From positions 108,810,001 to 108,874,000 of the forward strand of contig NC_059427.1 in NCBI RefSeq assembly GCF_021028975.2: a stretch of DNA of 64,000 nt. Direction: 5' to 3'. Each line of letters opens with the position of its first letter. Positions within the stretch are counted from its first letter, which is position 1. This DNA comes from Sphaerodactylus townsendi. Taxonomy: Eukaryota. The position numbers were made by a program, and so were the translations under genes. The notes beneath the pieces are model-generated. The model saw nothing but the letters and a program-made list of their open reading frames with translations. It did no database searches and was not told the origin of the DNA. This document shows, piece after piece, positions 27,211 to 48,771 of this stretch.

Positions 27211-28119
27211 ATGACTCTGATCCAAAGATGCATTTGGGGAAACTTCTAAGCACACAAGCAAGAATGCTCACACCTTTCCTCTCCACTTAATGACAACTAC
27301 AACCCAAATGTGATGCAGAAGTAGAACAGTACACAATGGGGAAAAACGGCACACTTCAAGTTGCTGAACGTGGTGGGACTTACACTGGGAGAACAGTGCC
27401 AAATCCACCATTTCTTTAGTACAAATGCATCACAGCCATATTTGTATACAAACAAAGCTCCCCTTTCGCCTGCTAAAACATACAGCAACTATGAGCTAGA
27501 TAATTCCGTCATTAAAAACAAAATAAACGCCACTCTCTCCAAGAATTTTAGAATGAGAAGCAGGGTCCAAGAATGTCATCAGTTTGTAATCTCAACACAC
27601 GCAGTTTTTCAGGATAGTCCATACACAGTATCCCCAGGTTTTCAAGGTTCTTATGGCCGCGTCCTCTGTTGTACCCCATTCATTCCACACTCAATCTTTA
27701 AATCTCCTCGTAAAAACCTCAGACATCCTATTTCACTACTGATTGCAACTCATCCTATACCATTCTGTCTCCTACAAATCCTGCCTTTTCAACGTCTCCC
27801 TTGTTCCAACCTCTTTCCCTTCGGTGGTCTTTTTTTTTAACCTCTCTCGAGTCCTCTCCTTATACCAATGTACAGTCGCCAGCTTCCACTATTCTAGGAC
27901 CCTTCCAAAACAAGCATTTCTTAATCCTCCTCCTGGAATTTCCTGCTCTCTATTATCAGCCCACCTCAACCCCTCACTTTCCTAGAAATGCTTCACTTTC
28001 CACCTTCTCGGCCCCTTCTACGGCATCTCCCCTCCCCCAAGCCCGCTGGTTTCAGGGCACCTTCCCAGACAGGCCCTTGTCATCCAAGCAGGAATCGCTT
28101 CCCCGTCACCCTCCCTTAC

Positions 28120-28243
28120 TAGGTCGCGCCCGGGCTGGACTGATCTCCAAGTTGAGGTCGATGCGCCTCCGGGCCTCTCTGTTCTCCTGTTTCAGTTTGG
28201 CCTCCAAGCGGGATAGTTTCTGCTCCAACGAGGACGCCGCCAT
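28120..28243 (-). CDS. MAP2K7: MAP2K7 coding exon 1 (MAASSLEQKLSRLEAKLKQENREARRRIDLNLEISPARARP)
   Basis: ATG at 28243 in AAGATGG context; 124 nt to the A|gtaag donor; MKK7 N-terminus with the D1 site. Confidence 0.97.
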
Positions 28244-28415
28244 CTTCCCCCGCCCCCCCGGAGCCGCTGACGCCGCAGCGCAGCCAGAATACACAAACAC
28301 TTCAGTGCGCAGGCGCTGCATGAACCGTTCAGGCCACCGTATTTCCTCCTCCGTCCTGTTTATCCAATATTGTACTTCTCTCGCCTCACCGCTTTTTCTC
28401 TCACGCATGCGCAGC

Positions 28416-28942
28416 GTTCTGCAACGTTGCCCTCGTAGGATCTACGCCGCAACTGTTCACTACTGCGAGTGCAGCCTGGAGTCTTATCAGTACGCATGCG
28501 CGTATTGCTGGCAAGCCGCGTCCTGAAGTGGTTCACATGAGTCTCTGCGCGGGGTTTGCAGCTGGGCTAGTCCCTGTCTCTGCCTGTGCCGGGAGGGAGA
28601 TCGTTGTGCGCCACAGGTGGTGCGCGGGTTCCCTTGCGGCTCCAGACATTCACGCGGCACTCATTCATTCGAGCCCTTCCTTCCCCGCGGGTTTGGAGCA
28701 GGCAGATCGTTCTTTAGAGGCCAGATTAGGAGCGCCTTTTGCCAGCCTTGGGAAAGTTCTTTGTGCAGCCACTCATGGGAGGCGGCGAGCCCCGCCCCAC
28801 CCGGCTGCGATTCCCTGGCACGGAGAGCTCGGGCTTTCCCACCAAGCGGAGGTTCTACAGCGTTGGCCTCGTAGGATCTACGCCGCAGCTGTTCACTACT
28901 GTGAACACAGCCTGGATTCTTACCAGTACGCATGCGCGCATT
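28416..28942. repeat. ~91-bp direct duplication in the MAP2K7 promoter (28416-28506 and 28852-28942)
   Basis: Both copies read gttct..cgttg.cctcgtaggatctacgccgca.ctgttcactactg...cagcctgga.tctta.cagtacgcatgcgcg. Confidence 0.9.
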
Positions 28943-29250
28943 TACTAACGCGTGATAGGTGAGACGGTGGGGCGTGGCCGTGGTTAGCAGATACTGAAAC
29001 TGAAATATTCCATAACGCCGGATAAACCTCTCAAGAGCGAATAAACCGGCTTGTCACGGGAGCCATCCAAAATGAATCCGCTTCCACGAAAGGAGCTAGT
29101 CGGCAGTCAAATCGTCTGAACGCTCCACCACGGCAGAAGAAGCCGAACTTTTTAAACCCTTTGTACAATTAAAACTGGACAGGTTGTTCAGCTCCTCCCC
29201 AATACACTTTATGGAAGGTGGAGCCAGAAAAAATATTTTATGGTGTAGAT

Positions 29251-29578
29251 CAGTGTTTCCCAACCTTTTCGAGGTCAGGGTACCCTTGACCTCACTCTTC
29301 ATATCTCACGGTACCCCTGCCACCACCCTCCACCTTCCCCTCCCATTGCCCCTGCTTGCCACACACCCCACCTTCCCCTCCCAGGGTGAAGGGTAGAACT
29401 GGGGGGGGGGGGGTGGCTGCTGACCTTGTGGCAGGCTTTGCCCCATGCTCCATGTCCTTGCTGGCACCGGTGGGAGACACCACAAAAATGAGGGGGGTGG
29501 TGGTAGTGTTGCCATGGTACCCCTGGGACATTCTCACGGCACCCCAGGGTACCAGGGAACCCTGGTTGAGAATGGCTG
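29251..29578. mobile_element. hAT (Charlie-like) MITE
   Basis: CAGTGTTTCCCAACC / GGTTGAGAATGGCTG termini; 8-bp TSD GTGTAGAT. Confidence 0.85.
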
Positions 29579-30654
29579 GTGTAGATGTTGTTTATTAATT
29601 ATATGGATCGGAATTGTTGGCGTCAAGAATGTAGTAGATCCTTGGCTGAATTTTTGTGTAAGGTATCTGCCAATTTTCCTGGACTTTGTTTTTAATCTCT
29701 TAATAAAAGTTAAATAAATAACTTCAATTTTAAAACAAAATTCTCCACCTCTATATTGATCAATTCCAGATATGCCTACCTTCTAAAATGCTTGCTGCAC
29801 TTTCAAATAACAGCAGAGTGTTTTCACACATTTGACAGATTTACAGAGCACCAAGTCACCTCAATTGACAGATAGAGAAATTCCCACCCCACCCCCACTG
29901 GGATTTCTCTGCAGCCTGAAGCTATTTATTTCGTCTTTCTCTTTAAACTACCCCACCCCCACTTTGCAGCTTGTAGGGGAATACTCGAAAAGGTACTCAC
30001 ACACCCCCTCCAACTGATAGTGGGAACGTGGGAATCAACCAGGGATAGTGAATTATCCTTGAGGTAGACAAGCAACTTTTTATTTGCTACCTGAGGAGTA
30101 GTCTGACTCAGCTGGAAAATCAGAGTTCAGTGTCTCAAACACTCAAAAATGAAAAGGTGTACAGTATAATGGTGAGAGCATGAGACCAGGTTTGAATTCA
30201 AATCATCACTTGGCCATGAAGCTCCTGCCTGTCTCACTAGGCTTTTATGAGAATGGAGTGCATTACAGACATTCAGTTCACACATACAAGGGGAGCCCAG
30301 CTCCTCCATTGTGGAAAGGTGCAGTCAGCAGCAACCTCCTTGCTTGGAAAGGATGCATTCTGGTTTGTCAAGAGCCGGCTTCACTGTTGCTCAGTTCTGT
30401 GCAGTTGGAGGAGTGTGGTGAGCAGGCTCAGTCCAAGAGATCTTGGAGTTAAAGGATGCAAAGGAAGACTTTGCCTGCCGGTCCTTCTGATCAGAAGGTG
30501 CTTTAGCACCCTCCTGCACTGCTTCTGGGTCCTTCTGGACTTTGGAGGCCCCCAGAAGCTGGCCTTGCGCTATTACTGCTGCAGAGAGCTGGGTCCAAAT
30601 GAGGGATCCATCCCCCAGATGGAGAGGTGGCCCCTCCCCGGAGTTTCACAGGCC

Positions 30655-31522: not shown

Positions 31523-31958
31523 CTTTAGATTATTGTAGGTACTTGGGACAAGACAGTCAGGCTGAACAAAAATCTCATAGCAACAGCAGCCAGATATATT
31601 AGAAAAGAACTTCAGTTATGCAGATACATGGAACTTTACCCATAAAAGTATTTCCAGTAATTAATCAGAATACAATCTGTATAGAGGAAGATCAGTTTTC
31701 CCAGTTTGAAGATGGCTGTAATGTTGCAGCCAGTCATGCAATACCTGTTACTGATGATGCTGATATAGTAATACATTTTAATGCTTTTTCTGCATCAGGC
31801 TGTAGGGAACCCCTGTAATGTATGCTTTAAAAAGAACCGGAAGGCCTCAGATTTCATGCATGTCATAAACCTCTCTAGGCTGTGTCTATATGGATGTGCC
31901 ATTTACATGCACATGCATGATATATGCAGTCATAAAAAGCCAAGATGTATGCAGACAT

Positions 31959-32263
31959 GAAGAAGAAGAAGGAGGAGGAGGAGGAGGAGGAGGAGGAGGA
32001 GGAGGGAGGAGTTTTGGTTACCCCCTTTCTCTCCTGCAGGAGGCTCAAGGGGCTTACAATCTCCTTGCCCTTCCCCCCTCACAACAAACACCCTGTGAGG
32101 TAGGTGGGGCTGAGAGAGCTCCGAGAAGCTGTGACTAACCCAAGGTCACCCAGCTGGCGTGTGTGGGAGTGTACAGGCTAATCCTGAATTCCTCACGCGG
32201 CAGAGCTGGGAATCAAACCTGGTTCCTCCAGATTAGATACAGGAGCTCTTAACCTCCTACGCT
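31959..32263 (-). mobile_element. tRNA-derived SINE with (GAA/GGA)n microsatellite tail
   Basis: Closely similar to 41751-42020; B box GGTTTGATTCC. Confidence 0.8.
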
Positions 32264-33173: not shown

Positions 33174-33659
33174 GGTAAATTGCTTGTGTATATACTTTGA
33201 AAAGGGGGCAAAAAAAGTTAAGTTATTGGTTGATATTTCTGCTAAACCATAGTCACAATCACAATCTGTTAGCTGAAGTTTGAAGCGGGACCCCAATGGT
33301 TATATTAGCTTCTGTGCCGTATACAAAATGGCAGTCTTTTACAGCTAAGGCTGCAAACTCTGGGTTGAGACATTCCTGGAGGTTTGATGGGGAGGAGGGG
33401 ATTGAGGAAGAGAGGGACGTCAGCAGGGTAGAATTCTATGGAGTCCACCCTCCAAAGCAGCCATTTTCTCCAGAGAAACTAACCTTAATTGTAATCTAGA
33501 AATGAATTGTAAATTCAAGGACATCCCCAAGCCTCACCTGGAGGCAGACAACCTTACAGCTCATGTGATTTGCAAATGAGTCTCTAAGATACATGATTAA
33601 AATGTCTCAGTGTCTCAGTTACTCTGTCTCCTAGTGAGAGAAGTGAAAGTTTTACACAC

Positions 33660-34464
33660 AGCTGACATCAGAGGGAATGTTTTTCATGTGAGATGGCTGT
33701 GTGTATAACAGTCTTCTCAGCAATTAGTCTACTCATCTTCAATAGAGTGCACAGGCCTTTTCTGTAAGAGGGGAGGGGGACCTGTTGGTTTTCTTGTGCC
33801 CCAGACAGATGAATCGAAGTCTTGATTACTGGTGGAACAGCAATCTAACAATTGCCCTTAGCAACAAGAGTTTTTCTCCAATCAATCAAGGATCTGTGGA
33901 GTGAGCCACAGGTGCTATTGTTTTGCTCACAGAACCACATAGACACTTTAATTGTCCAGATGGTAGAGGGATAAAGTACAGGAAATTAAGATGCGGATAG
34001 GGATTTTATAATTTCCTTAAGGTGAAAAAAGCATTGAGAAGGATTTGCATCTTGCTGTGAAATAAAAGAGGACCTAAGGACCAAGTCAGCTGATTATCTC
34101 CTCAGGACTCAGTGCTGTGCTAGAAATTTGGTGACTTCATTTTGATCTGAGACTGCCAGTTCTAAAAGCATCAAGAATCTTGTCTAAGGGGCTGAAGACT
34201 ACTATTTGTGCAGGATCTCTGGTCTTTCATCTTGCAGGAGTTGCCAGAGAGATTCAGCTAGTAATGTTAGAAAATGTGATATGGCACATACTGGACCCTT
34301 TTCTGAAAGCATAGCTGGTTAATAGGCTCCACCTTGACCAATGAACATTGCTAAAGGTGTTGCTTAGTTAGTGCTCTCATATCACTGGTAGCTTTCATTC
34401 TGGGATCATTTCAAGCTTCGATACTTCTACTTTCAGAAGAAGCTCTCTTACCATAGAGGTACAA
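33660..34464 (-). pseudogene. Decayed LRR-coding remnant of the LRRC8D-like gene (presumably now 3' UTR)
   Basis: Manual translation across frames: KLEMIPE*KLP, MRALTKQHL*QCSLVKVEP, LNLSGN, SLQPLR, EEIIS, FFTLRKL*, IPLPSGQL, KGNC*, NIPSDV; colinear with LRRC8 LRRs. Confidence 0.85.
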
Positions 34465-35604
34465 CTATGTCTGCTGCTGCAACTTATCGTCAAGACTACA
34501 ATTCAGCAGGCCACTCTCTCTTATAGCAGAGAGAAAGATAGTAAACCGCCATGAATACAATTGGTCACACTGATCAGCCATATGAAGCAAGAAAGCAAAA
34601 TCATTATACACATCTGGAATGTTACAAATATCTCTCTTCTCTTGCACTTGTTTAAAGGAATACTTCTGCAGTGGCTGCAACATTAGCCACAAAAGTGGGC
34701 AAGTTCCCACCACTCCATAGAGGACTACCAAGAATAGGTAAGTAGCCATCAGCTTTTGCAGAATAAAAGCCAAGCTGTGGGTACAGAGAAAAGTAGAGTA
34801 GCCAGTGAGGTTTTCTGTTTCTGGCCAGCAAATATGCTTGAATGAGACGGCACCTACAAAGATGGAGGTATAGCACAGCACAGTTAGGATCTCTGCAACT
34901 TTGAAAATTGTCTGTCCAGTATAGACCATGTAAATCAAGTTAGCACTTTCAGTATGTGTCCTAAATCTGCATATTTTTTCAAAGAGTGCCCGTGCCTGTT
35001 CTCTGTCCTTCCAGTCTAGAATAGGAGAGAATGAAGGAGAAATGAATTGTTCTTGACACATCCCAATATCAAAGGGTTTCGACAGGCCAAGGAATTGCTG
35101 GCTGGCCATTTCTGAGAGAGCTTTAGTAGTCCAAGGTGACTCAAAGCATTTCCTGAGGATGGACAAGAAGTGTTCAATCTTTGATGAGGTTTTAGGATAC
35201 CTGAACCAGAAGTTATTACTTGCCATTAAGAGCAGTGAGTTGATAAGTGTCAGGTAAGGAAAATACTTGGAGAACCAAGGCAATGCTTTCTGATAGCAGA
35301 TATGACTAATGTACAAATACTGCTGGTAGTCAAGGTTGACTGAGCGGCCACTGTTTACGGCAGAAAATTCACCACTGGTAGCATGATCTGTAGTTTCAGG
35401 GATAGTCAGAGGAGCGATGGTTTCATTTGGCTTGTTATTCAGTGGCAAGCAGGTCATCTGATCAACAGATATTAACAGAGTGCCTGAGAGAAGAGAGACC
35501 ATCAACATCAGTAGCACAAAGAAGTCCATTAGGACATCCCACCAAGGCTTTAGAGTCTGGAACCGGCTGACATTGAAGAAGGTCACTTCTGTCAAGGTAA
35601 ACAT
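34465..35604 (-). CDS. LRRC8D-like paralog, transmembrane (pannexin-like) domain only, 379 aa, no LRR domain
   Basis: [62 protein letters not shown]: LRRC8 family with LRRC8D-type residues. Intact polypyrimidine tract/AG acceptor 2 nt before the ATG. Confidence 0.85.
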   Translation of the reverse strand: MFTLTEVTFFNVSRFQTLKPWWDVLMDFFVLLMLMVSLLSGTLLISVDQMTCLPLNNKPNETIAPLTIPETTDHATSGEFSAVNSGRSVNLDYQQYLYISHICYQKALPWFSKYFPYLTLINSLLLMASNNFWFRYPKTSSKIEHFLSILRKCFESPWTTKALSEMASQQFLGLSKPFDIGMCQEQFISPSFSPILDWKDREQARALFEKICRFRTHTESANLIYMVYTGQTIFKVAEILTVLCYTSIFVGAVSFKHICWPETENLTGYSTFLCTHSLAFILQKLMATYLFLVVLYGVVGTCPLLWLMLQPLQKYSFKQVQEKRDICNIPDVYNDFAFLLHMADQCDQLYSWRFTIFLSAIRESGLLNCSLDDKLQQQT

Positions 35605-35947
35605 AGCTAGGAAAAAAAGAAAAAATAGAGGTCAGTAAAATCATTGGCTGTTGCATGGTGAAGCTAATGGAATAATTGGTGGTTCTACCTTTGAACCTGA
35701 GAGTTGTTCAGAGAGAGAGGTCTGCAGCAAATAAAAAACCAGAATTCTAAAACATTGTTCAGAGTCTTAGGAATAAGTTGAGCAGATACTAGAAAGGCGT
35801 TTTTTCCCCTCAACTTTCTCGTTACAAATGAATACATGCTCCATTCTTTCAGGAGAATAGTTGAGGAAAATAGATGAAGAGGAACAGGAGAGATCCACTT
35901 TCTTATTCATACGCAAAGGCTCATTCAGGAGGTCTGACTGTTGGTTG

Positions 35948-36410
35948 TGTAGTCATGACCGCGAGGTCAGCGCAAGAACGAGACGAGACGCGGTGATAAC
36001 ATCTGGTGGAGAGCGCCAGCAGCGGGAGCGCGGGTGTCCGTGTTCCTAGCGACTCTGCCGCGTGCTGGTTCCTGGCACCTTTTATTATGATTCTAGCGGG
36101 GGCGTGTAGAAGGGCGGAACGGGGGGGAAATCCGGGAGAGCGGGAGACTGAGAGATCATCATGTGATGCATGATCTCACCTGGCTGCTACGTGCGGAGAG
36201 GAGCATCAGCGTCTGGGCCTAATCCTCACCTGGGGGCAAGACCATTGTCCCTTTGTCTGGGACGCCCGGTGGTTGTGAGCCAGGTGGTTCATGACCCGTG
36301 ACTCATCGGGGGGTGAGGAGTGGGGGAGCGGCGCGACCAGAAGACCGTAGGAGCACCGGTGTGCCAGCGCTCTACTTACGGCGCTGCTGGGTCAGCAGCT
36401 CATCCCTACA
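35948..36410 (-). mobile_element. Solo LTR (463 bp)
   Basis: TGTAG...CTACA ends; 5-bp TSD GGTTG; minus-strand AATAAAAGG; CpGs retained. Confidence 0.85.
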
Positions 36411-41300: not shown

Positions 41301-41717
41301 GGCAGATTTAACTGAATTCTAAATCTGAGAAATTTAAAGATGTGTCCAGTGTGTGTGTCCAGTATATATAGATGGTATTGTATAGGCAACACATAGCTAT
41401 ACTAAATGTTCTGATATATGCCTTCTATAGGCAAAAGGCACCTCAAAGCATCTCAAAGAATAATTGTTGCCAACTCTGTCCCACTTGTGGGATTTATTTT
41501 GGTCATAAAACCATTTATTCATGAATTATCCTTTAAGGCTGAAAACTATAAATTAGCTGGAACAGTGAAAAATGCATCTTTTAGATTTATGTAACAACCT
41601 ACAAGCAAAGTCTCTGGCCTACAGTGTCAAAACAATGTCCATAAGGATATCATGGCTGATGGTATTAAAAGCCACTTTAAAAATCCAGGCAGAATTATAC
41701 TCTCCTGCCCCGCTTCT

Positions 41718-42020
41718 GGTGGTGGTGGTGGTGGTGGTGGAGGAGGAGGAGTTTGGATTTATATCCCCCCTTTATCTCCTGTAGGAGACTCAAAGGGGCT
41801 TACAATCTCCTTACCCATCCCCCCTCACAACAAACACCCTGTGAGGTGGGTGGGGCTGAGAGAACTCCGAAAAGCTGTGACTAGCCCAAAGTCACCCAGC
41901 TGGCATGTGCGGGAGTGCACAGATAAACCTCCACAGCTCAGGCGGCAGAGCAGGGAATCAAACCCCCGTTCCTCCAGATTAGAATGCACCTGCTCTAAAC
42001 CACTACGCCACTGCTGCTCC
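41718..42020 (-). mobile_element. Full-length tRNA-derived SINE with (GGT/GGA)n tail
   Basis: A box TGGCGTAGTGG and B box GGTTTGATTCC on minus. Confidence 0.85.
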
Positions 42021-42983
42021 TTAAACATATTGTGTGCGGCTAGGAGCTCCTAGTTGCCCATTTTCAATATGCAGAGTTTTTTCTTCTTTAGATCAGTTTT
42101 GGGGTTGTGTCCTGACCTTTTGGAGGTCTAGCCAAACCATTCATATGTGGCAGCTTTTTAGGCCAACCATTACATTATTTAACAGTTAATTTTTAAAAAA
42201 TCTTTGTACTTGTTCCATTCTTTTACATTGTTTCAATAAACTAGCTAAAAGCTAAACAGCTCAGTGTCAGTCATCCCATAACAACTTGTCTGGACACATA
42301 CTAATGAACATGACTGGTTGTGGCCCAAAAAAGTACATGTTATGGAAAGCACTTCCACATTTTCTAACCTATTTATTTAATTTATTAGATGGTGGTAGCT
42401 GAAGACTGAACCTCAACTATGCATGGACTGTCTTCACTGAGGTTTGAATAGCTGTGCTACACATGGAAATCTTTGCTTTTTGCAATACTCGTATCCCACC
42501 TCAAACAATTTAGTTTTTATTACAGAATTTTTCTTTTAATTTTTCATATAGTGCCCACCACTAGGTGGCAATAGGATGCAATAAATTAGGTATCCAAATA
42601 GACCTTGGCATGAAATAGTAGGATTCTATCAGCTACATAATCATCATGCCTTTCACCCAAGGAAGTAATATAAGAGGATTCTCCTCTCCCCATTTTATCC
42701 AGAGACATAGGGACCATCCCAAGCTTACTTAGGTAGCTTCATGGCAGAATGGGGATTTTAACTTAGCTTTTCCAGTCTGATATTCTAAATCCTACACCAT
42801 GTGAACTCTCCATTATGTTTGAGGAGAACACAAGAAGAACCCATTTTGGCTGCCCACTTCTCTCAGCCAAAGACATAAATCCCTATCCACCCAGTACTGG
42901 AAGCACCACCCACAGGGACAAAAGATCCAGTCAATTCCGTGTATTTCCCTTTTCCTACCTGTAGATCAATGTCTGATCCTTTT

Positions 42984-46518: not shown

Positions 46519-48771
46519 TCATTCCTCCTCCAACTTCTCTCTGATTTCTAAAGGCAATGACTCGTAGACTGTGCTTTCTATCTCCAGACCAGAACGTTTG
46601 AGGGCACGGCACATGCCAATTTCCCGGGGCAGGAATTCAAGTTGGTTCCCTTTCAGCTCTAGTGTGGTCAGCAAAACCAGACTGCCCACACGTTGAGAGA
46701 GGCGGTGCAGTTTGTTGTATCCTGCTTTGAGAGTCTTGAGTTTCTTGCAGAAAAAGAGTTCATCAGGCAGTGCCTCCAAGGAATTGTGAGAAATGGCAAA
46801 ATGCTGAAGGTTATATAGGGCTCCCATCCCAGGAGGGATGACCCGGATGTTATTGTTGGAAAGATCCAGATAACGCAGTTTATTGCACTGGAATAGTTGG
46901 TTAGGGAGGTTCTCAATGTTGTTATGGCTGAGGTCAAGGCGCTCTAAAGTCTTGAGTTTGCGAATATGATCAGGGATGGTGGTGATGTGGTTGCACCAAA
47001 GTTTGAGAGATGTTAGCTTGCGGCAGTGCTGGAAACTGATGATCTCCTCAATGGAATGTAGTTGGTTGTCTTTAAGATCCAACTCCTGCAGATTCACTAG
47101 GCTGAAGACGGCATGGGGGATGCGTTCCAGATTGCAGTTGATCAGCTGTACTTCTTGCACAGAGAAGAGCTTCTTCAGATTATTGAGAGTCACTAGTTTA
47201 GTCCCATCATTACGGATTATTAGCTTCTGCAGATGACTGGCAACATCAGTCACACTGGGGGGCAATTTTGAAATGTTGCTATGCAGCATTAGAGTCTTCA
47301 GGTTCTTTAGCTCACGCAGGTTTTCCAGAGTTCCTGTCCGGCCTAGCTCCTGGCTGAAAAGCCCTGAGATGTGTAACTCTTCCAGACTTCTCAAGTTGTA
47401 AGTCCACAGTGGTATATCTTTGATCTCATCAAACTTTACATTCATAACCTTCAACTGTTCACGGAGGAATATAAGACCAGTAAAAGGCAGTTTCACAGGA
47501 CAGTTGATCAGTGAAAGCTCTTGAAGATTGACCAACTGAGTTACTGATGTTGGGAATGTAACATCTTTGAGGAGCTCCAGTTTCAGAGACTCCACCTCTG
47601 TCAGTTCAAAGACAGTGTCAGGTAACCCAGGTAGCATGAAGAGGTGAAGTTCCAACCGGCCATGAGGATTCTTCTGCAACTTCTGCCGTAGTTTCTCTAC
47701 CATCCACTCATGGTTGAGGTTGAGCTGTGTGAGCTTGCATTCGCTGACTTCTGAGAGGAAAACAGCAAACCGCTTGGAGTAAAGGGAATCATACTGGTCT
47801 ATAAGATGGAGCATGAAAGCAAAGTCATTCTTGACATCAGGAATGTCACTGATGCCAGTCTCCTCACGTGCATACTTGAAGGAATACTCTTTAAGTGGCC
47901 GATGGAACAGCCAGTAAAGAGTATAGAGACAGGTCATGCCATATAATCCAAGAAAGCAGATGTAGCAGATGGCTAGCTTAGAGAACAGATGTGCTTTGGT
48001 GTGATTACAGCAGAAATGGTCATAGCCTGTCATGTCTTCCATCTTGATACTGCATGGCACTATAAAGCTAATATTGTGAACTAGTGCAGCATTGTAGGCA
48101 GTGATGATTAAGAACTTGCAGACTTTGAGAATGGTTTGGCGAATGTACATGGTATAAAGGATGTCTCCCTTTTCCACATGGAGCCGGAACTTCTTCACTT
48201 TTTCAAAGAGAGCCTTGGCCTGTTCCCCTTCCTTTTTATCCAGGAGGCTAATGGGAGTGGAGGACTCTGCAACCTTCTTATCTATAATGGATCCCGATAC
48301 GGGGTTAAACTCAACAGATTCACTGGGAGCACTACTTTTCCTTCTCCGATCCCTCTTTGCTGGGCTTGCACTGTCCTGGTTTTCCACAGAGACTTCTGAG
48401 ATGGCCCTAGTAGTCCAAGGTGAATCAAAGCACTTGCTCAGGATGGAGATGAAGTGTTCAATCTTGGAACTGGTACCAGGAAATTTGAACCAAAAAGAAG
48501 CACACACCATAAAGATGAGGGTGTGGATGACGACCAGGTAGGGAAAGTATTTGGCATACCAATGGAGGGCTGTCTCATAGCACATCTGATTGATGTAGTT
48601 ATATTGTTGTAGGTCCAGGTTGTTTTGTAATCCACTCATTTCCTTATAGGTGGGGGACTCAGTTGTCTCGGAAGCGTTTATTATCTTGGTGAAATCTTCA
48701 CAAGTGGCATCAGCAAAGGGTGTACCACTAGGGACATGGTTTGGAAGACAAATAATCTTGTCTTGTGTTAC
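46519..48771 (-). CDS. LRRC8E: LRRC8E large coding exon ([10 protein letters not shown] ... [10 protein letters not shown]), VRAC subunit with full LRR domain
   Basis: gacag|GTA acceptor; 2253 nt open. With the upstream exon it gives 796 aa. C-terminal EEE and position next to MAP2K7 identify E rather than C. Confidence 0.95.

What the first reader, a model, noticed from the sequence alone, without database searches (positions are those of the whole stretch)
33660..34464. Fossil LRR domain: sharply asymmetric decay across one ancestral exon
Seen: right after the stop, colinear LRRC8 LRR motifs persist in shifting frames. There are stops at 34395-34397 (KLEMIPE*), 34351-34353 (QHL*QC), 34006-34008 (LRKL*) and 33845-33847 (KGNC*), plus several frameshifts and large deletions (~800 bp left versus ~1.2 kb of LRR coding in the neighbouring LRRC8E). 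The 1137 bp upstream has no disablement. Inference: the LRR half has drifted neutrally for a long time while the TM half stayed open. This argues for selection on the truncated protein rather than a simple pseudogene or a single sequencing error.
Basis: partly seen in the sequence, partly recalled or inferred. Interest (0 to 1): 0.8.

Follow-up and report, generated by a model that had tools for sequence, protein, structure and literature searches.

The report
Fossil LRR tail, pore-only LRRC8
A gecko-lineage genome carries a sixth LRRC8 channel gene that lost its leucine-rich-repeat half to one ancient stop codon: the pore half is still an intact gene under purifying selection in all sampled squamates, while the old LRR coding sequence decays at about the neutral rate just behind the stop.

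Summary

- **Fossil.** Window 34439-33676 (- strand) is a colinear remnant of an LRRC8D-type LRR domain. My frameshift-aware score is 93, against 42±7 for shuffles and 40±6 for real non-coding controls (0/326 reach it). It carries 4-6 stops, 7-10 frameshifts and one deletion of roughly 106-143 aa.
- **ORF.** The 379-codon ORF upstream (34465-35604) holds the pannexin-like pore domain only.
  - It is intact in at least 12 squamates.
  - Pairwise dN/dS is 0.09-0.28; the ML estimate is 0.28, and omega=1 is worse by 225 lnL units.
  - This matches the neighbouring full-length LRRC8E (0.16).
- **Age.** Geckos, skinks and lacertoids share the stop at one site, so the truncation predates crown Squamata.
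- **Decay rate.** The fossil evolves at about the third-codon-position rate. It has vanished from the first kb after the stop in Elgaria, Anolis and Python.
- **Gene identity.** It sits between LRRC8E and a MAP2K7-like kinase gene. It belongs to an old paralog clade that is sister to LRRC8D. Chelydra keeps a full-length 791-aa copy.
- **Second loss.** Sea turtles (Caretta, Lepidochelys) broke the same boundary independently, four codons downstream.
- **Human analogue.** The stop aligns to human LRRC8C position 420, the engineered "t419" truncation.
- **Gaps.** Expression and channel function are untested. I found no paper on this gene.

The parts
34465..35604 (-). Intact 379-codon ORF (plus TAG) encoding only the pannexin-like pore/TM domain and cytoplasmic linker of an LRRC8D-like paralog
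   Evidence: Pfam PF12534 E 3.5e-105 with no LRR hit. The best solved relatives are LRRC8D chains, E 1e-111. dN/dS is 0.09-0.28 and the ML omega is 0.28.
34465..34467 (-). TAG stop at the pore/LRR boundary, the presumed ancestral squamate nonsense codon. It corresponds to Chelydra codon G408 and aligns to human LRRC8C position 420.
   Evidence: DNA alignment of ORF ends shows the stop at the homologous site in the window, Eublepharis/L007, Lerista and Rhineura. It is shifted out of frame or modified in Hemicordylus and Podarcis. The LRRC8C numbering comes from the t419 primer in PMC11729881.
33676..34439 (-). Fossil LRR domain, colinear with LRRC8D LRR1 through the C-terminal region, spread over three frames
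   Evidence: Frameshift-aware alignment scores 93 and 84, with 0 of 326 controls reaching them. Traceback; tblastn HSPs.
34395..34397 (-). In-frame stop in fossil LRR1 (…KLEMIPE*KLP, against LRRC8D …LELIPEAKIP)
34351..34353 (-). In-frame stop (QHL*QC, against QELHLC/LQLYHC). The same TAG is present in Hemicordylus.
34006..34008 (-). In-frame stop (…FFTLRKL*)
33845..33847 (-). In-frame stop (KGNC*, against GQNCIT)
34065..34257 (-). Zone holding the large internal deletion: about 106-143 LRR residues are missing, and the breakpoint depends on the reference. It also holds further stops at 34162-34164 and 34120-34122.
   Evidence: Traceback of both alignments.
35605..35630 (-). Polypyrimidine tract plus AG splice acceptor directly before the ATG. 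The coding exon is preceded by a 5' exon in the Elgaria and Hemicordylus gene models.
   Evidence: Sequence read. Gene models spanning introns. The splice-site role is inferred.
33947..33952 (-). ATTAAA, the only polyadenylation-like hexamer inside the fossil. A possible 3' end signal, which is inference only.
46519..48639 (-). Context: main coding exon of the full-length LRRC8E neighbour (706 aa, pore plus LRR)
   Evidence: Pfam. blastp gives 66% identity to frog LRRC8E against 62% to LRRC8C. The tree groups it with LRRC8E at 100/99.
28115..28261 (-). Context: first coding exon of the downstream kinase gene, MAP2K7-like by its N-terminal sequence (identified from memory)
   Evidence: tblastx gives 92% identity to the Podarcis exon. 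The called genes are about 437-aa Pkinase proteins in all loci.

Best explanation
**What is shown.**
- The locus is the squamate ortholog of an old sixth LRRC8 paralog. This paralog is annotated 'LRRC8D-like', is sister to LRRC8D, and lies between LRRC8E and a MAP2K7-like gene.
- In the stem lineage of crown squamates, one nonsense codon arose at the very start of the LRR domain.
- Since then the 5' 1137 bp has been kept as a protein-coding gene for a pore-only subunit. That subunit has the N-terminal coil, four TM helices, the extracellular loops with their conserved cysteines, and the cytoplasmic linker.
- The former LRR coding sequence became untranslated DNA. It has collected stops, frameshifts and deletions at about the neutral rate. 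33676-34439 is what is left of it in this genome.

**What is inferred.**
- The protein still oligomerises through its pore domain. It probably enters heteromeric VRAC-type channels with LRRC8A and other subunits.
- There it would contribute a wide aromatic constriction (Tyr where LRRC8D has F143) but no LRR domain. That should alter gating, because the LRR ring couples to activation.
- Its end corresponds to human LRRC8C residue 419. The engineered human construct ending there assembles but gives little current. I therefore lean towards a dampening or modulatory subunit rather than a constitutively open one.
For: - **Domain content:**
- **Orthologs and their ends:**
- **Purifying selection:**
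  - Pairwise omega is 0.09-0.28.
  - Bootstrap 95% CI is 0.11-0.26 for the nearest pair.
  - GY+F3X4 gives omega 0.28, lnL -6313.8, against -6538.5 with omega fixed at 1.
  - The LRRC8E comparator gives 0.156.
- **Fossil significance and anatomy:**
- **Fossil in relatives:** Hemicordylus z 13-18, Rhineura 10-15, Lerista 6-11. It is absent in Elgaria, Anolis and Python.
- **Near-neutral rate of the fossil:**
- **Paralog clade and synteny:**
  - Tree support is 100/100 for the clade, 100/99 for turtles plus squamates, and 93/83 for sisterhood to LRRC8D.
  - Loci.
  - Squamates also have a true LRRC8D.
- **Full-length ancestor state:** the Chelydra 791-aa ORF.
- **Independent second loss:** a frameshift at Chelydra codon 412 is shared by Caretta and two Lepidochelys species. 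All four one-nt indels lie in the LRR half. Omega is 0.28 in the TM half and 0.57 in the LRR half.
- **Sequence accuracy:** WGS contigs.
- **Mechanism analogy:** in PMC11729881, LRRC8C truncated at 400 assembles and is constitutively active with LRRC8A. t419 assembles but gives low currents. t379 gives no protein. PMC9399500 covers F143 and R103.
Against: - There is no RNA or protein evidence. The four runs holding the stretch are genomic DNA. The three Logan contigs of relatives are colinear with unspliced genomic DNA.
- The ML omega of 0.28 and the long squamate stem branch (0.49) show relaxed or altered constraint compared with LRRC8D proper.
- The homology of the 'GCATAAT' motif in Toxicofera to the ancestral stop is plausible but weak.
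- Frameshift counts in the fossil depend on the alignment model.
- All functional statements rest on analogy with mammalian LRRC8C constructs.
- Loss of the LRR domain in LRRC8A impairs trafficking (PMC9399500), so an LRR-less subunit might not reach the membrane alone.
Confidence: 0.85

Rival explanations
1. The whole locus is a dying pseudogene, and the 1137-bp ORF is open by chance or only recently disabled elsewhere.
For: The LRR half is clearly dead. No expression data exist.
Against: The ORF is open in at least 12 species spanning crown Squamata. Omega is 0.09-0.28, and omega=1 is rejected by 225 lnL units. Constraint equals that on LRRC8E next door. ORF first and second positions change 3-4 times more slowly than the fossil.
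Confidence: 0.03
2. The stop and frameshifts are assembly or sequencing errors, and the real gene is a full-length LRRC8.
For: None, beyond the general possibility.
Against: Contigs from three runs of the same species match 33453-35975 exactly. A sister species has 13 substitutions and no indel there. The same truncation occurs in independent assemblies of many species.
Confidence: 0.01
3. The fossil is not neutral. It is kept as a functional 3' UTR or regulatory sequence of the truncated gene, which would explain why about 200 bp after the stop still aligns between a gecko and cordylids or amphisbaenians.
For: 34440-34206 aligns at 72-86% to Rhineura and 76% to Hemicordylus, while almost no other flanking DNA aligns at that depth. 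One stop (TAG at 34351-34353) is identical in Hemicordylus.
Against: Over the whole block, K80 is 0.33-0.69, equal to or above ORF third positions. There are 49-123 gap columns per pair. The block diverged fastest in the closest relative, and it is missing from the first kb after the stop in Elgaria, Anolis and Python. Local HSP identities are ascertainment-biased.
Confidence: 0.12
4. The LRR half was lost several times independently within squamates rather than once in their common ancestor.
For: ORF ends differ between lineages (377-432 aa). Toxicofera read a different frame. Sea turtles show that independent loss at this boundary does happen.
Against: The stop lies at the same codon in Gekkota (window, Eublepharis), Scincoidea (Lerista) and Lacertoidea (Rhineura). 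Its letters are still present out of frame in Hemicordylus. No squamate with an open LRR half was found. Fossils are comparably degraded in all lineages.
Confidence: 0.1
5. The pore-only protein works on its own as a homomeric large-pore channel, a reversion to pannexin-like architecture, or in an intracellular membrane. It would then be independent of LRRC8A and VRAC.
For: The Pfam family is the pannexin-like region. Pore-domain constructs of LRRC8C and LRRC8D are stable enough to have been solved alone (9ezc and 9t5p_E; PMC11729881).
Against: Non-A LRRC8 subunits need LRRC8A for surface delivery in mammals (PMC9399500). Nothing here tests it.
Confidence: 0.2

Closest known systems
LRRC8D (VRAC subunit D)
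   Same: It gives the best sequence match to the pore domain (E 1e-111). The family is the sister clade in the tree. It has an aromatic residue at the extracellular constriction (F143 in D, Tyr here). The fossil is more D-like than E-like.
   Different: This is a separate gene: squamates also have a 855-859 aa LRRC8D. Pore-domain identity is only about 55%. EL1 and IL1 are much shorter. The genomic neighbours differ (LRRC8E and a MAP2K7-like gene). There is no LRR domain.
Full-length 'LRRC8D-like' paralog of Chelydra serpentina, lungfish, gar, Amia and perch
   Same: Same clade at 100/100. Same synteny in turtles. It serves as the ancestral template for the fossil.
   Different: Those genes keep an open LRR half: 791 aa in Chelydra and 823 aa in lungfish. 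The squamate genes stop at the equivalent of Chelydra codon 408.
Human LRRC8C truncation variants (LRRC8C-trunc at L400, t419, t379; Quinodoz et al. 2024, PMC11729881)
   Same: Loss of the whole LRR domain at the pore/LRR boundary, with the pore domain and linker retained. The squamate end aligns to residue 419 (…DKLRQKL against …KKLQQQA/…DKLQQQT).
   Different: Those are de novo or rare human alleles, or laboratory constructs, of another paralog. One causes dominant disease through constitutive activity. The squamate form is fixed and selected for roughly 200 My, and its electrophysiology is unknown.
LRRC8A ebouriffé mouse allele and the agammaglobulinaemia truncation
   Same: Natural premature stops that remove LRRs.
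   Different: These are loss-of-function or trafficking-defective alleles of the essential subunit (PMC9399500). They are not maintained by selection.
Pannexins
   Same: A four-TM large-pore fold without an LRR domain. The Pfam family name reflects the shared ancestry.
   Different: The squamate protein is an LRRC8 by sequence and descent. Its LRR-less state is secondary, as the fossil proves.

Membership tests
LRRC8 family (VRAC subunits) | N-terminal pannexin-like four-TM pore domain (PF12534) | tested here: met
   E 3.5e-105, covering profile positions 1-346 in two stretches. Matches LRRC8D, A and C structures at E 1e-112 to 1e-90.
LRRC8 family (VRAC subunits) | C-terminal domain of about 15-17 leucine-rich repeats in the same polypeptide | tested here: not met
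   There is no LRR Pfam hit in the ORF. The ORF stops at the domain boundary, and only a non-coding fossil remains.
LRRC8 family (VRAC subunits) | Conserved extracellular cysteines and the TM2-IL1 core motif | tested here: met
   C52, C103, C259 and C274 and the FWF.YPKTSSKIE…KCFESPWT block are invariant or nearly so across 18 sequences. Their disulfide role is taken from LRRC8 structures, not tested here.
LRRC8 family (VRAC subunits) | Assembly into hexameric or heptameric channels, with heteromerisation with LRRC8A | not testable with these tools
   Supported only by analogy with pore-domain constructs (PMC11729881).
'LRRC8D-like' sixth paralog clade (sister of LRRC8D) | Monophyly with turtle, lungfish and gar D-like genes, separate from LRRC8D proper | tested here: met
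   Careful ML tree: clade 100/100, squamates plus turtles 100/99, LRRC8D proper 100/99. Sisterhood of the two clades is 93/83.
'LRRC8D-like' sixth paralog clade (sister of LRRC8D) | Position between LRRC8E and the MAP2K7-like kinase gene | tested here: met
   Window, Elgaria, Podarcis, Lerista, Hemicordylus, Caretta and Chelydra. The kinase alone is seen downstream in Anolis, Rhineura and Python. The kinase name rests on memory of the MAP2K7 N-terminus.
Unitary pseudogene | Disablements spread over the whole former CDS, and omega near 1 | tested here: not met
   0 disablements in 1137 bp against at least 11 in 764 bp. Omega is 0.09-0.28. This holds only for the LRR half.

The most novel reading that the evidence does not exclude
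Reptiles carry a naturally selected, LRR-less LRRC8 subunit. An ancient sixth paralog shed its LRR domain at the same pore/LRR boundary at least twice: in stem squamates and in cheloniid sea turtles. The remaining pore-only protein acts as an endogenous modulator of VRAC-type channels, or as a stand-alone pannexin-like channel. It would be the evolutionary counterpart of the human LRRC8C truncations that rewire gating.
Probability: 0.45. Interest if true: 0.85.

Novelty: new variant of a known kind. Interest (0 to 1): 0.72.

Why it matters
The LRR domains are thought to be central to VRAC gating, trafficking and regulation. In humans, removing the LRR domain of LRRC8C at this boundary causes a dominant multisystem disease.

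A pore-only LRRC8 subunit kept under purifying selection for the whole history of squamates, and re-evolved in sea turtles, is a natural experiment on what the pore domain does without LRRs. It gives ready-made sequences for electrophysiology and cryo-EM.

It also documents a sixth vertebrate LRRC8 paralog that is not in the A-E nomenclature. This pairs LRRC8E/D-like with LRRC8C/D. It is also a clean, datable example of domain loss by one stop codon, with the discarded half still visible as a fossil.

Tried and rejected
1. **tblastn with the neighbour's LRR domain.** Nothing significant came up downstream of the stop. The neighbour is a poor reference, and even with frameshift-aware alignment it gives only z 2.2-2.5.
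2. **Neighbour first called LRRC8C.** The PDB search suggested LRRC8C, but no LRRC8E structure exists.
3. **RNA evidence.**
   - The look-up of sequencing runs returned only four runs of unrecorded type.
   - Read laying showed even genomic coverage broken only at repeats, so they are DNA.
   - Logan contigs L007, L011 and L012 extend through the splice acceptor into intron-like DNA that aligns with genomic loci, so they are not spliced transcripts.
4. **Plain tblastn of the Chelydra LRR against the window.** No hit at E<=1 (where the query also carried a stray stop). The colinear DP was needed.
5. **Fossil under constraint?** Considered because of high local identities. Whole-block distances argue against it.
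6. **Sea-turtle frameshifts as assembly errors?** Rejected, because Caretta and two Lepidochelys species share the same shifted tail.
7. **Complex prediction and structure prediction.** Not run.
8. **Spliced models.** The LRRC8E first exon and the MAP2K7-like exons were left separate.
9. **Literature.** No paper on LRRC8F. The only two hits for 'LRRC8D-like' are fish papers that mention it in passing. Nothing on reptile truncated LRRC8. The library covers open-access papers only.

Full report
**What is at the coordinates.**
- On the minus strand an ORF runs from 35604 to 34465: 379 codons plus TAG.
- Pfam finds only the pannexin-like TM region of LRRC8 (PF12534, E 3.5e-105) and no LRR.
- The best solved relatives are LRRC8D chains (E about 1e-111). 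The match ends at the pore/LRR boundary.

**Is the fossil real?**
- A tblastn with the neighbouring gene's LRR domain was negative.
- With a turtle LRRC8D (P0036) and pieces of the Caretta ortholog, three colinear hits appeared in three frames:
  - 34439-34383;
  - 34068-33940 (E 5e-4);
  - 33874/33829-33671 (E 0.009).
- I wrote a frameshift-tolerant, colinear local alignment with a fixed cost for long gaps and scored 33600-34464(-):
  - 93 against the LRRC8D LRR domain, versus 42.1±6.7 (max 63) for 200 dinucleotide shuffles and 39.7±6.4 (max 59) for 126 real non-coding segments of this window;
  - 84 against the Chelydra ortholog (control maxima 74 and 72);
  - 57 against the LRRC8E neighbour, which is not significant.
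- The traceback aligns 34439..33676 to LRR residues 294-650 of the reference:
  - 239 codons at 30% identity;
  - five in-path stops;
  - 7-10 frameshifts, depending on the reference;
  - one deletion of 106-143 residues.
- With at least 11 disablements in 764 bp and none in 1137 bp, a uniform rate has P of about 4e-5.
- WGS contigs of the same species reproduce 33453-35975 without a difference. A sister species shows 13 substitutions there and no indel: 4 in the ORF (2 synonymous, I248V, F187L) and 6 in the fossil.

**What the gene is.**
I first mislabelled it LRRC8C because the PDB has no LRRC8E. blastp and the tree corrected this.
- Downstream lies a kinase gene. Its first coding exon (28261-28115) reads like the MAP2K7 N-terminus (the name is from memory).
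- The same order, LRRC8E then pore-only gene then kinase, holds in Elgaria and Podarcis. The same order holds in Caretta with its own truncated copy.
- LRRC8E upstream is also seen in Lerista and Hemicordylus, and in Chelydra with its full-length copy.
- The kinase downstream is also seen in Anolis, Rhineura and Python.
- A careful ML tree gives this structure:
  - the ten squamate pore-only proteins form one clade (100/100);
  - that clade is sister to the turtle genes (100/99);
  - both sit inside a clade with 'LRRC8D-like' genes of lungfish, gar, Amia and perch (100/100);
  - that clade is sister to LRRC8D proper (93/83).
- Squamates also have a normal 855-859 aa LRRC8D.
- So this is a sixth, old LRRC8 paralog. 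The tandem LRRC8E plus D-like mirrors LRRC8C plus LRRC8D.
- I take human LRRC8E and MAP2K7 to be adjacent on 19p13.2 with nothing between them. That is from memory, so the mammalian loss is an inference.

**Selection on the pore half.**
- Proteins of 377-432 aa containing only the pore domain exist in Eublepharis, Elgaria, Varanus, Podarcis/Lacerta/Zootoca, Rhineura, Pogona, Phrynocephalus, Anolis, Sceloporus, Hemicordylus, Lerista and Python.
- I re-extracted the ORFs from genomic DNA.
- Over 361 gap-free codons, all 45 pairwise NG86 dN/dS values are 0.09-0.28. Window against its nearest relative gives 0.17, with a bootstrap CI of 0.11-0.26.
- A GY+F3X4 model gives omega 0.28 (lnL -6313.8). 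Fixing omega at 1 gives -6538.5.
- For the same species pair, the neighbouring LRRC8E has omega 0.156 (pore part 0.08, LRR part 0.225) and the truncated gene 0.13.
- The pore half is therefore as constrained as an ordinary LRRC8 gene.

**Age and mode of the truncation.**
- A DNA alignment of the ORF ends shows the stop at one homologous site, equivalent to Chelydra codon G408:

| Lineage | Reading at the site |
|---|---|
| Window | …CAG CAG CAG ACA TAG |
| Lerista | …CAG CAG CAA GCA TAA |
| Rhineura | one codon later, after a 3-nt insertion |
| Hemicordylus | same letters, out of frame after a 1-nt deletion |
| Podarcis | modified to the adjacent TGA |
| Eublepharis | ends …LLQHA* at the same site |

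- The window's closest relative clusters with Eublepharis, and window plus relative branch deep in the squamate clade. So the window's lineage is Gekkota.
- A stop shared by Gekkota, Scincoidea and Lacertoidea places the event before crown Squamata.
- Toxicofera read a different frame over a possibly homologous 'GCATAAT' and carry new 10-45 aa tails. That detail is uncertain.

**Neutrality of the LRR half.**
- Against the nearest relative, the ORF is 88% identical. The fossil is 70% (47 gap columns in 268) and the upstream flank 72-76%.
- In a five-species alignment of the proximal fossil block, K80 distances are 0.33-0.69. ORF third positions give 0.22-0.51 and first plus second positions 0.08-0.15. 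There are 49-123 gap columns per pair.
- The same colinear test finds fossils behind the stop in Hemicordylus (z 13-18), Rhineura (10-15), Lerista (6-11) and a second skink (about 4).
- It finds nothing in the first kb after the stop in Podarcis, Elgaria, Anolis or Python. Podarcis keeps two short (31 and 34 bp) matches to the window's fossil about 1.5 kb further on.
- So the fossil is dispensable and erodes lineage by lineage.

**The ancestral state and a second loss.**
- Chelydra serpentina has an uninterrupted 791-codon gene with the pore and LRR halves in one frame, although it is annotated as a 301-aa partial.
- Caretta has four single-nucleotide indels, all in the LRR half (Chelydra codons 412, 466, 566, 789). 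Omega is 0.28 in the pore half and 0.57 in the LRR half.
- The first frameshift, with its out-of-frame tail (…RRQVGRDALGPAGAEAL…), is shared by Caretta, Lepidochelys olivacea and L. kempii in several assemblies.
- It is therefore real and independent of the squamate stop, only four codons away from it.

**Mechanism (inferred).**
- The ORF keeps everything up to the end of the cytoplasmic linker.
- In human LRRC8C, Quinodoz et al. (PMC11729881) report:
  - a construct ending at 379 is not expressed;
  - one ending at 400 assembles and makes LRRC8A/C channels constitutively active;
  - one ending at 419 assembles robustly but gives low, poorly swelling-activated currents.
- The t419 primer in that paper shows that LRRC8C ends …DKLRQKL at 419. 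The squamate proteins end …KKLQQQA or …DKLQQQT at the aligned residues. The natural stop therefore corresponds to position 420.
- The residue at the extracellular constriction is Tyr (NLDYQQY) in all squamate and turtle orthologs. LRRC8D has F143 and LRRC8A has R103 (PMC9399500).
- I therefore favour an assembly-competent, LRR-less subunit that modifies heteromeric VRAC-type channels. A stand-alone pannexin-like channel is the alternative.
- Nothing here shows transcription, translation, assembly or current.

**Novelty.**
- Automatic annotations call these genes 'LRRC8D-like'.
- Full-text searches found no paper on a sixth LRRC8 paralog, on 'LRRC8F', or on reptile LRR-less LRRC8 genes.

**Constraints observed.**
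- The window has no N.

Noticed in passing
L006:10001-12420 (Caretta caretta); proteins P0017, P0346-P0348: Cheloniid sea turtles (Caretta, Lepidochelys olivacea, L. kempii) share a +1 frameshift at the pore/LRR boundary of the same paralog, at Chelydra codon 412. Caretta has three more 1-nt indels in the LRR half. This is a young, independent repeat of the squamate truncation.
   Followed up: partly
L010:10001-12376 (Chelydra serpentina): An intact 791-codon full-length ortholog is annotated only as a 301-aa 'LRRC8D, partial' protein (P0020). It is the best template for the ancestral state.
   Followed up: yes
window 35948-36410: High-copy repeat, with word depth up to about 10^6 in WGS contigs. 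It lies about 340 bp upstream of the ATG and is absent at this site in the sister species (run X4 contig joins 35942 to 36411) and in the gecko relative L007. It looks like a young SINE-like insertion in the putative intron or promoter region.
   Followed up: partly
window 33404-33587: A second high-copy repeat directly downstream of the end of the fossil. Many contigs end or diverge here.
   Followed up: no
window 35710-35759: A 50-bp non-coding element 105-155 bp upstream of the ATG is 86% identical to Rhineura and 80% to Python (41 bp). It is the only upstream DNA alignable at that depth. It may be an intronic or promoter element of the truncated gene.
   Followed up: no
window 28115-28261 (-) and GC-rich 28001-30000: First coding exon of a MAP2K7-like kinase gene (MAASSLEQKLSRLEAKLKQENREARRRIDLNL…), next to a GC-rich (0.535) stretch that looks like a CpG-island promoter.
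   Followed up: partly
window 46519-48639 (-): The LRRC8E main exon starts at about residue 97 of the protein. The first ~96 residues must lie on an upstream exon, which I did not locate or join.
   Followed up: no
window 31890-32138 (+) and 41652-42053 (+): Two copies of a repeat with a long G/poly-Gly or poly-Glu run, followed by the same translated motif (…LTISLP.PPHNKHPVR…). This is probably an interspersed repeat family.
   Followed up: no
Proteins P0055/P0210 (carpet and zebra sharks), P0019 (lamprey): Sharks have a further, very divergent 'LRRC8D-like' gene that falls outside both LRRC8D and the D-like clade (stem 0.97, support 100/100). The deep history of D-type LRRC8 genes is more complex than A-E.
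   Followed up: no
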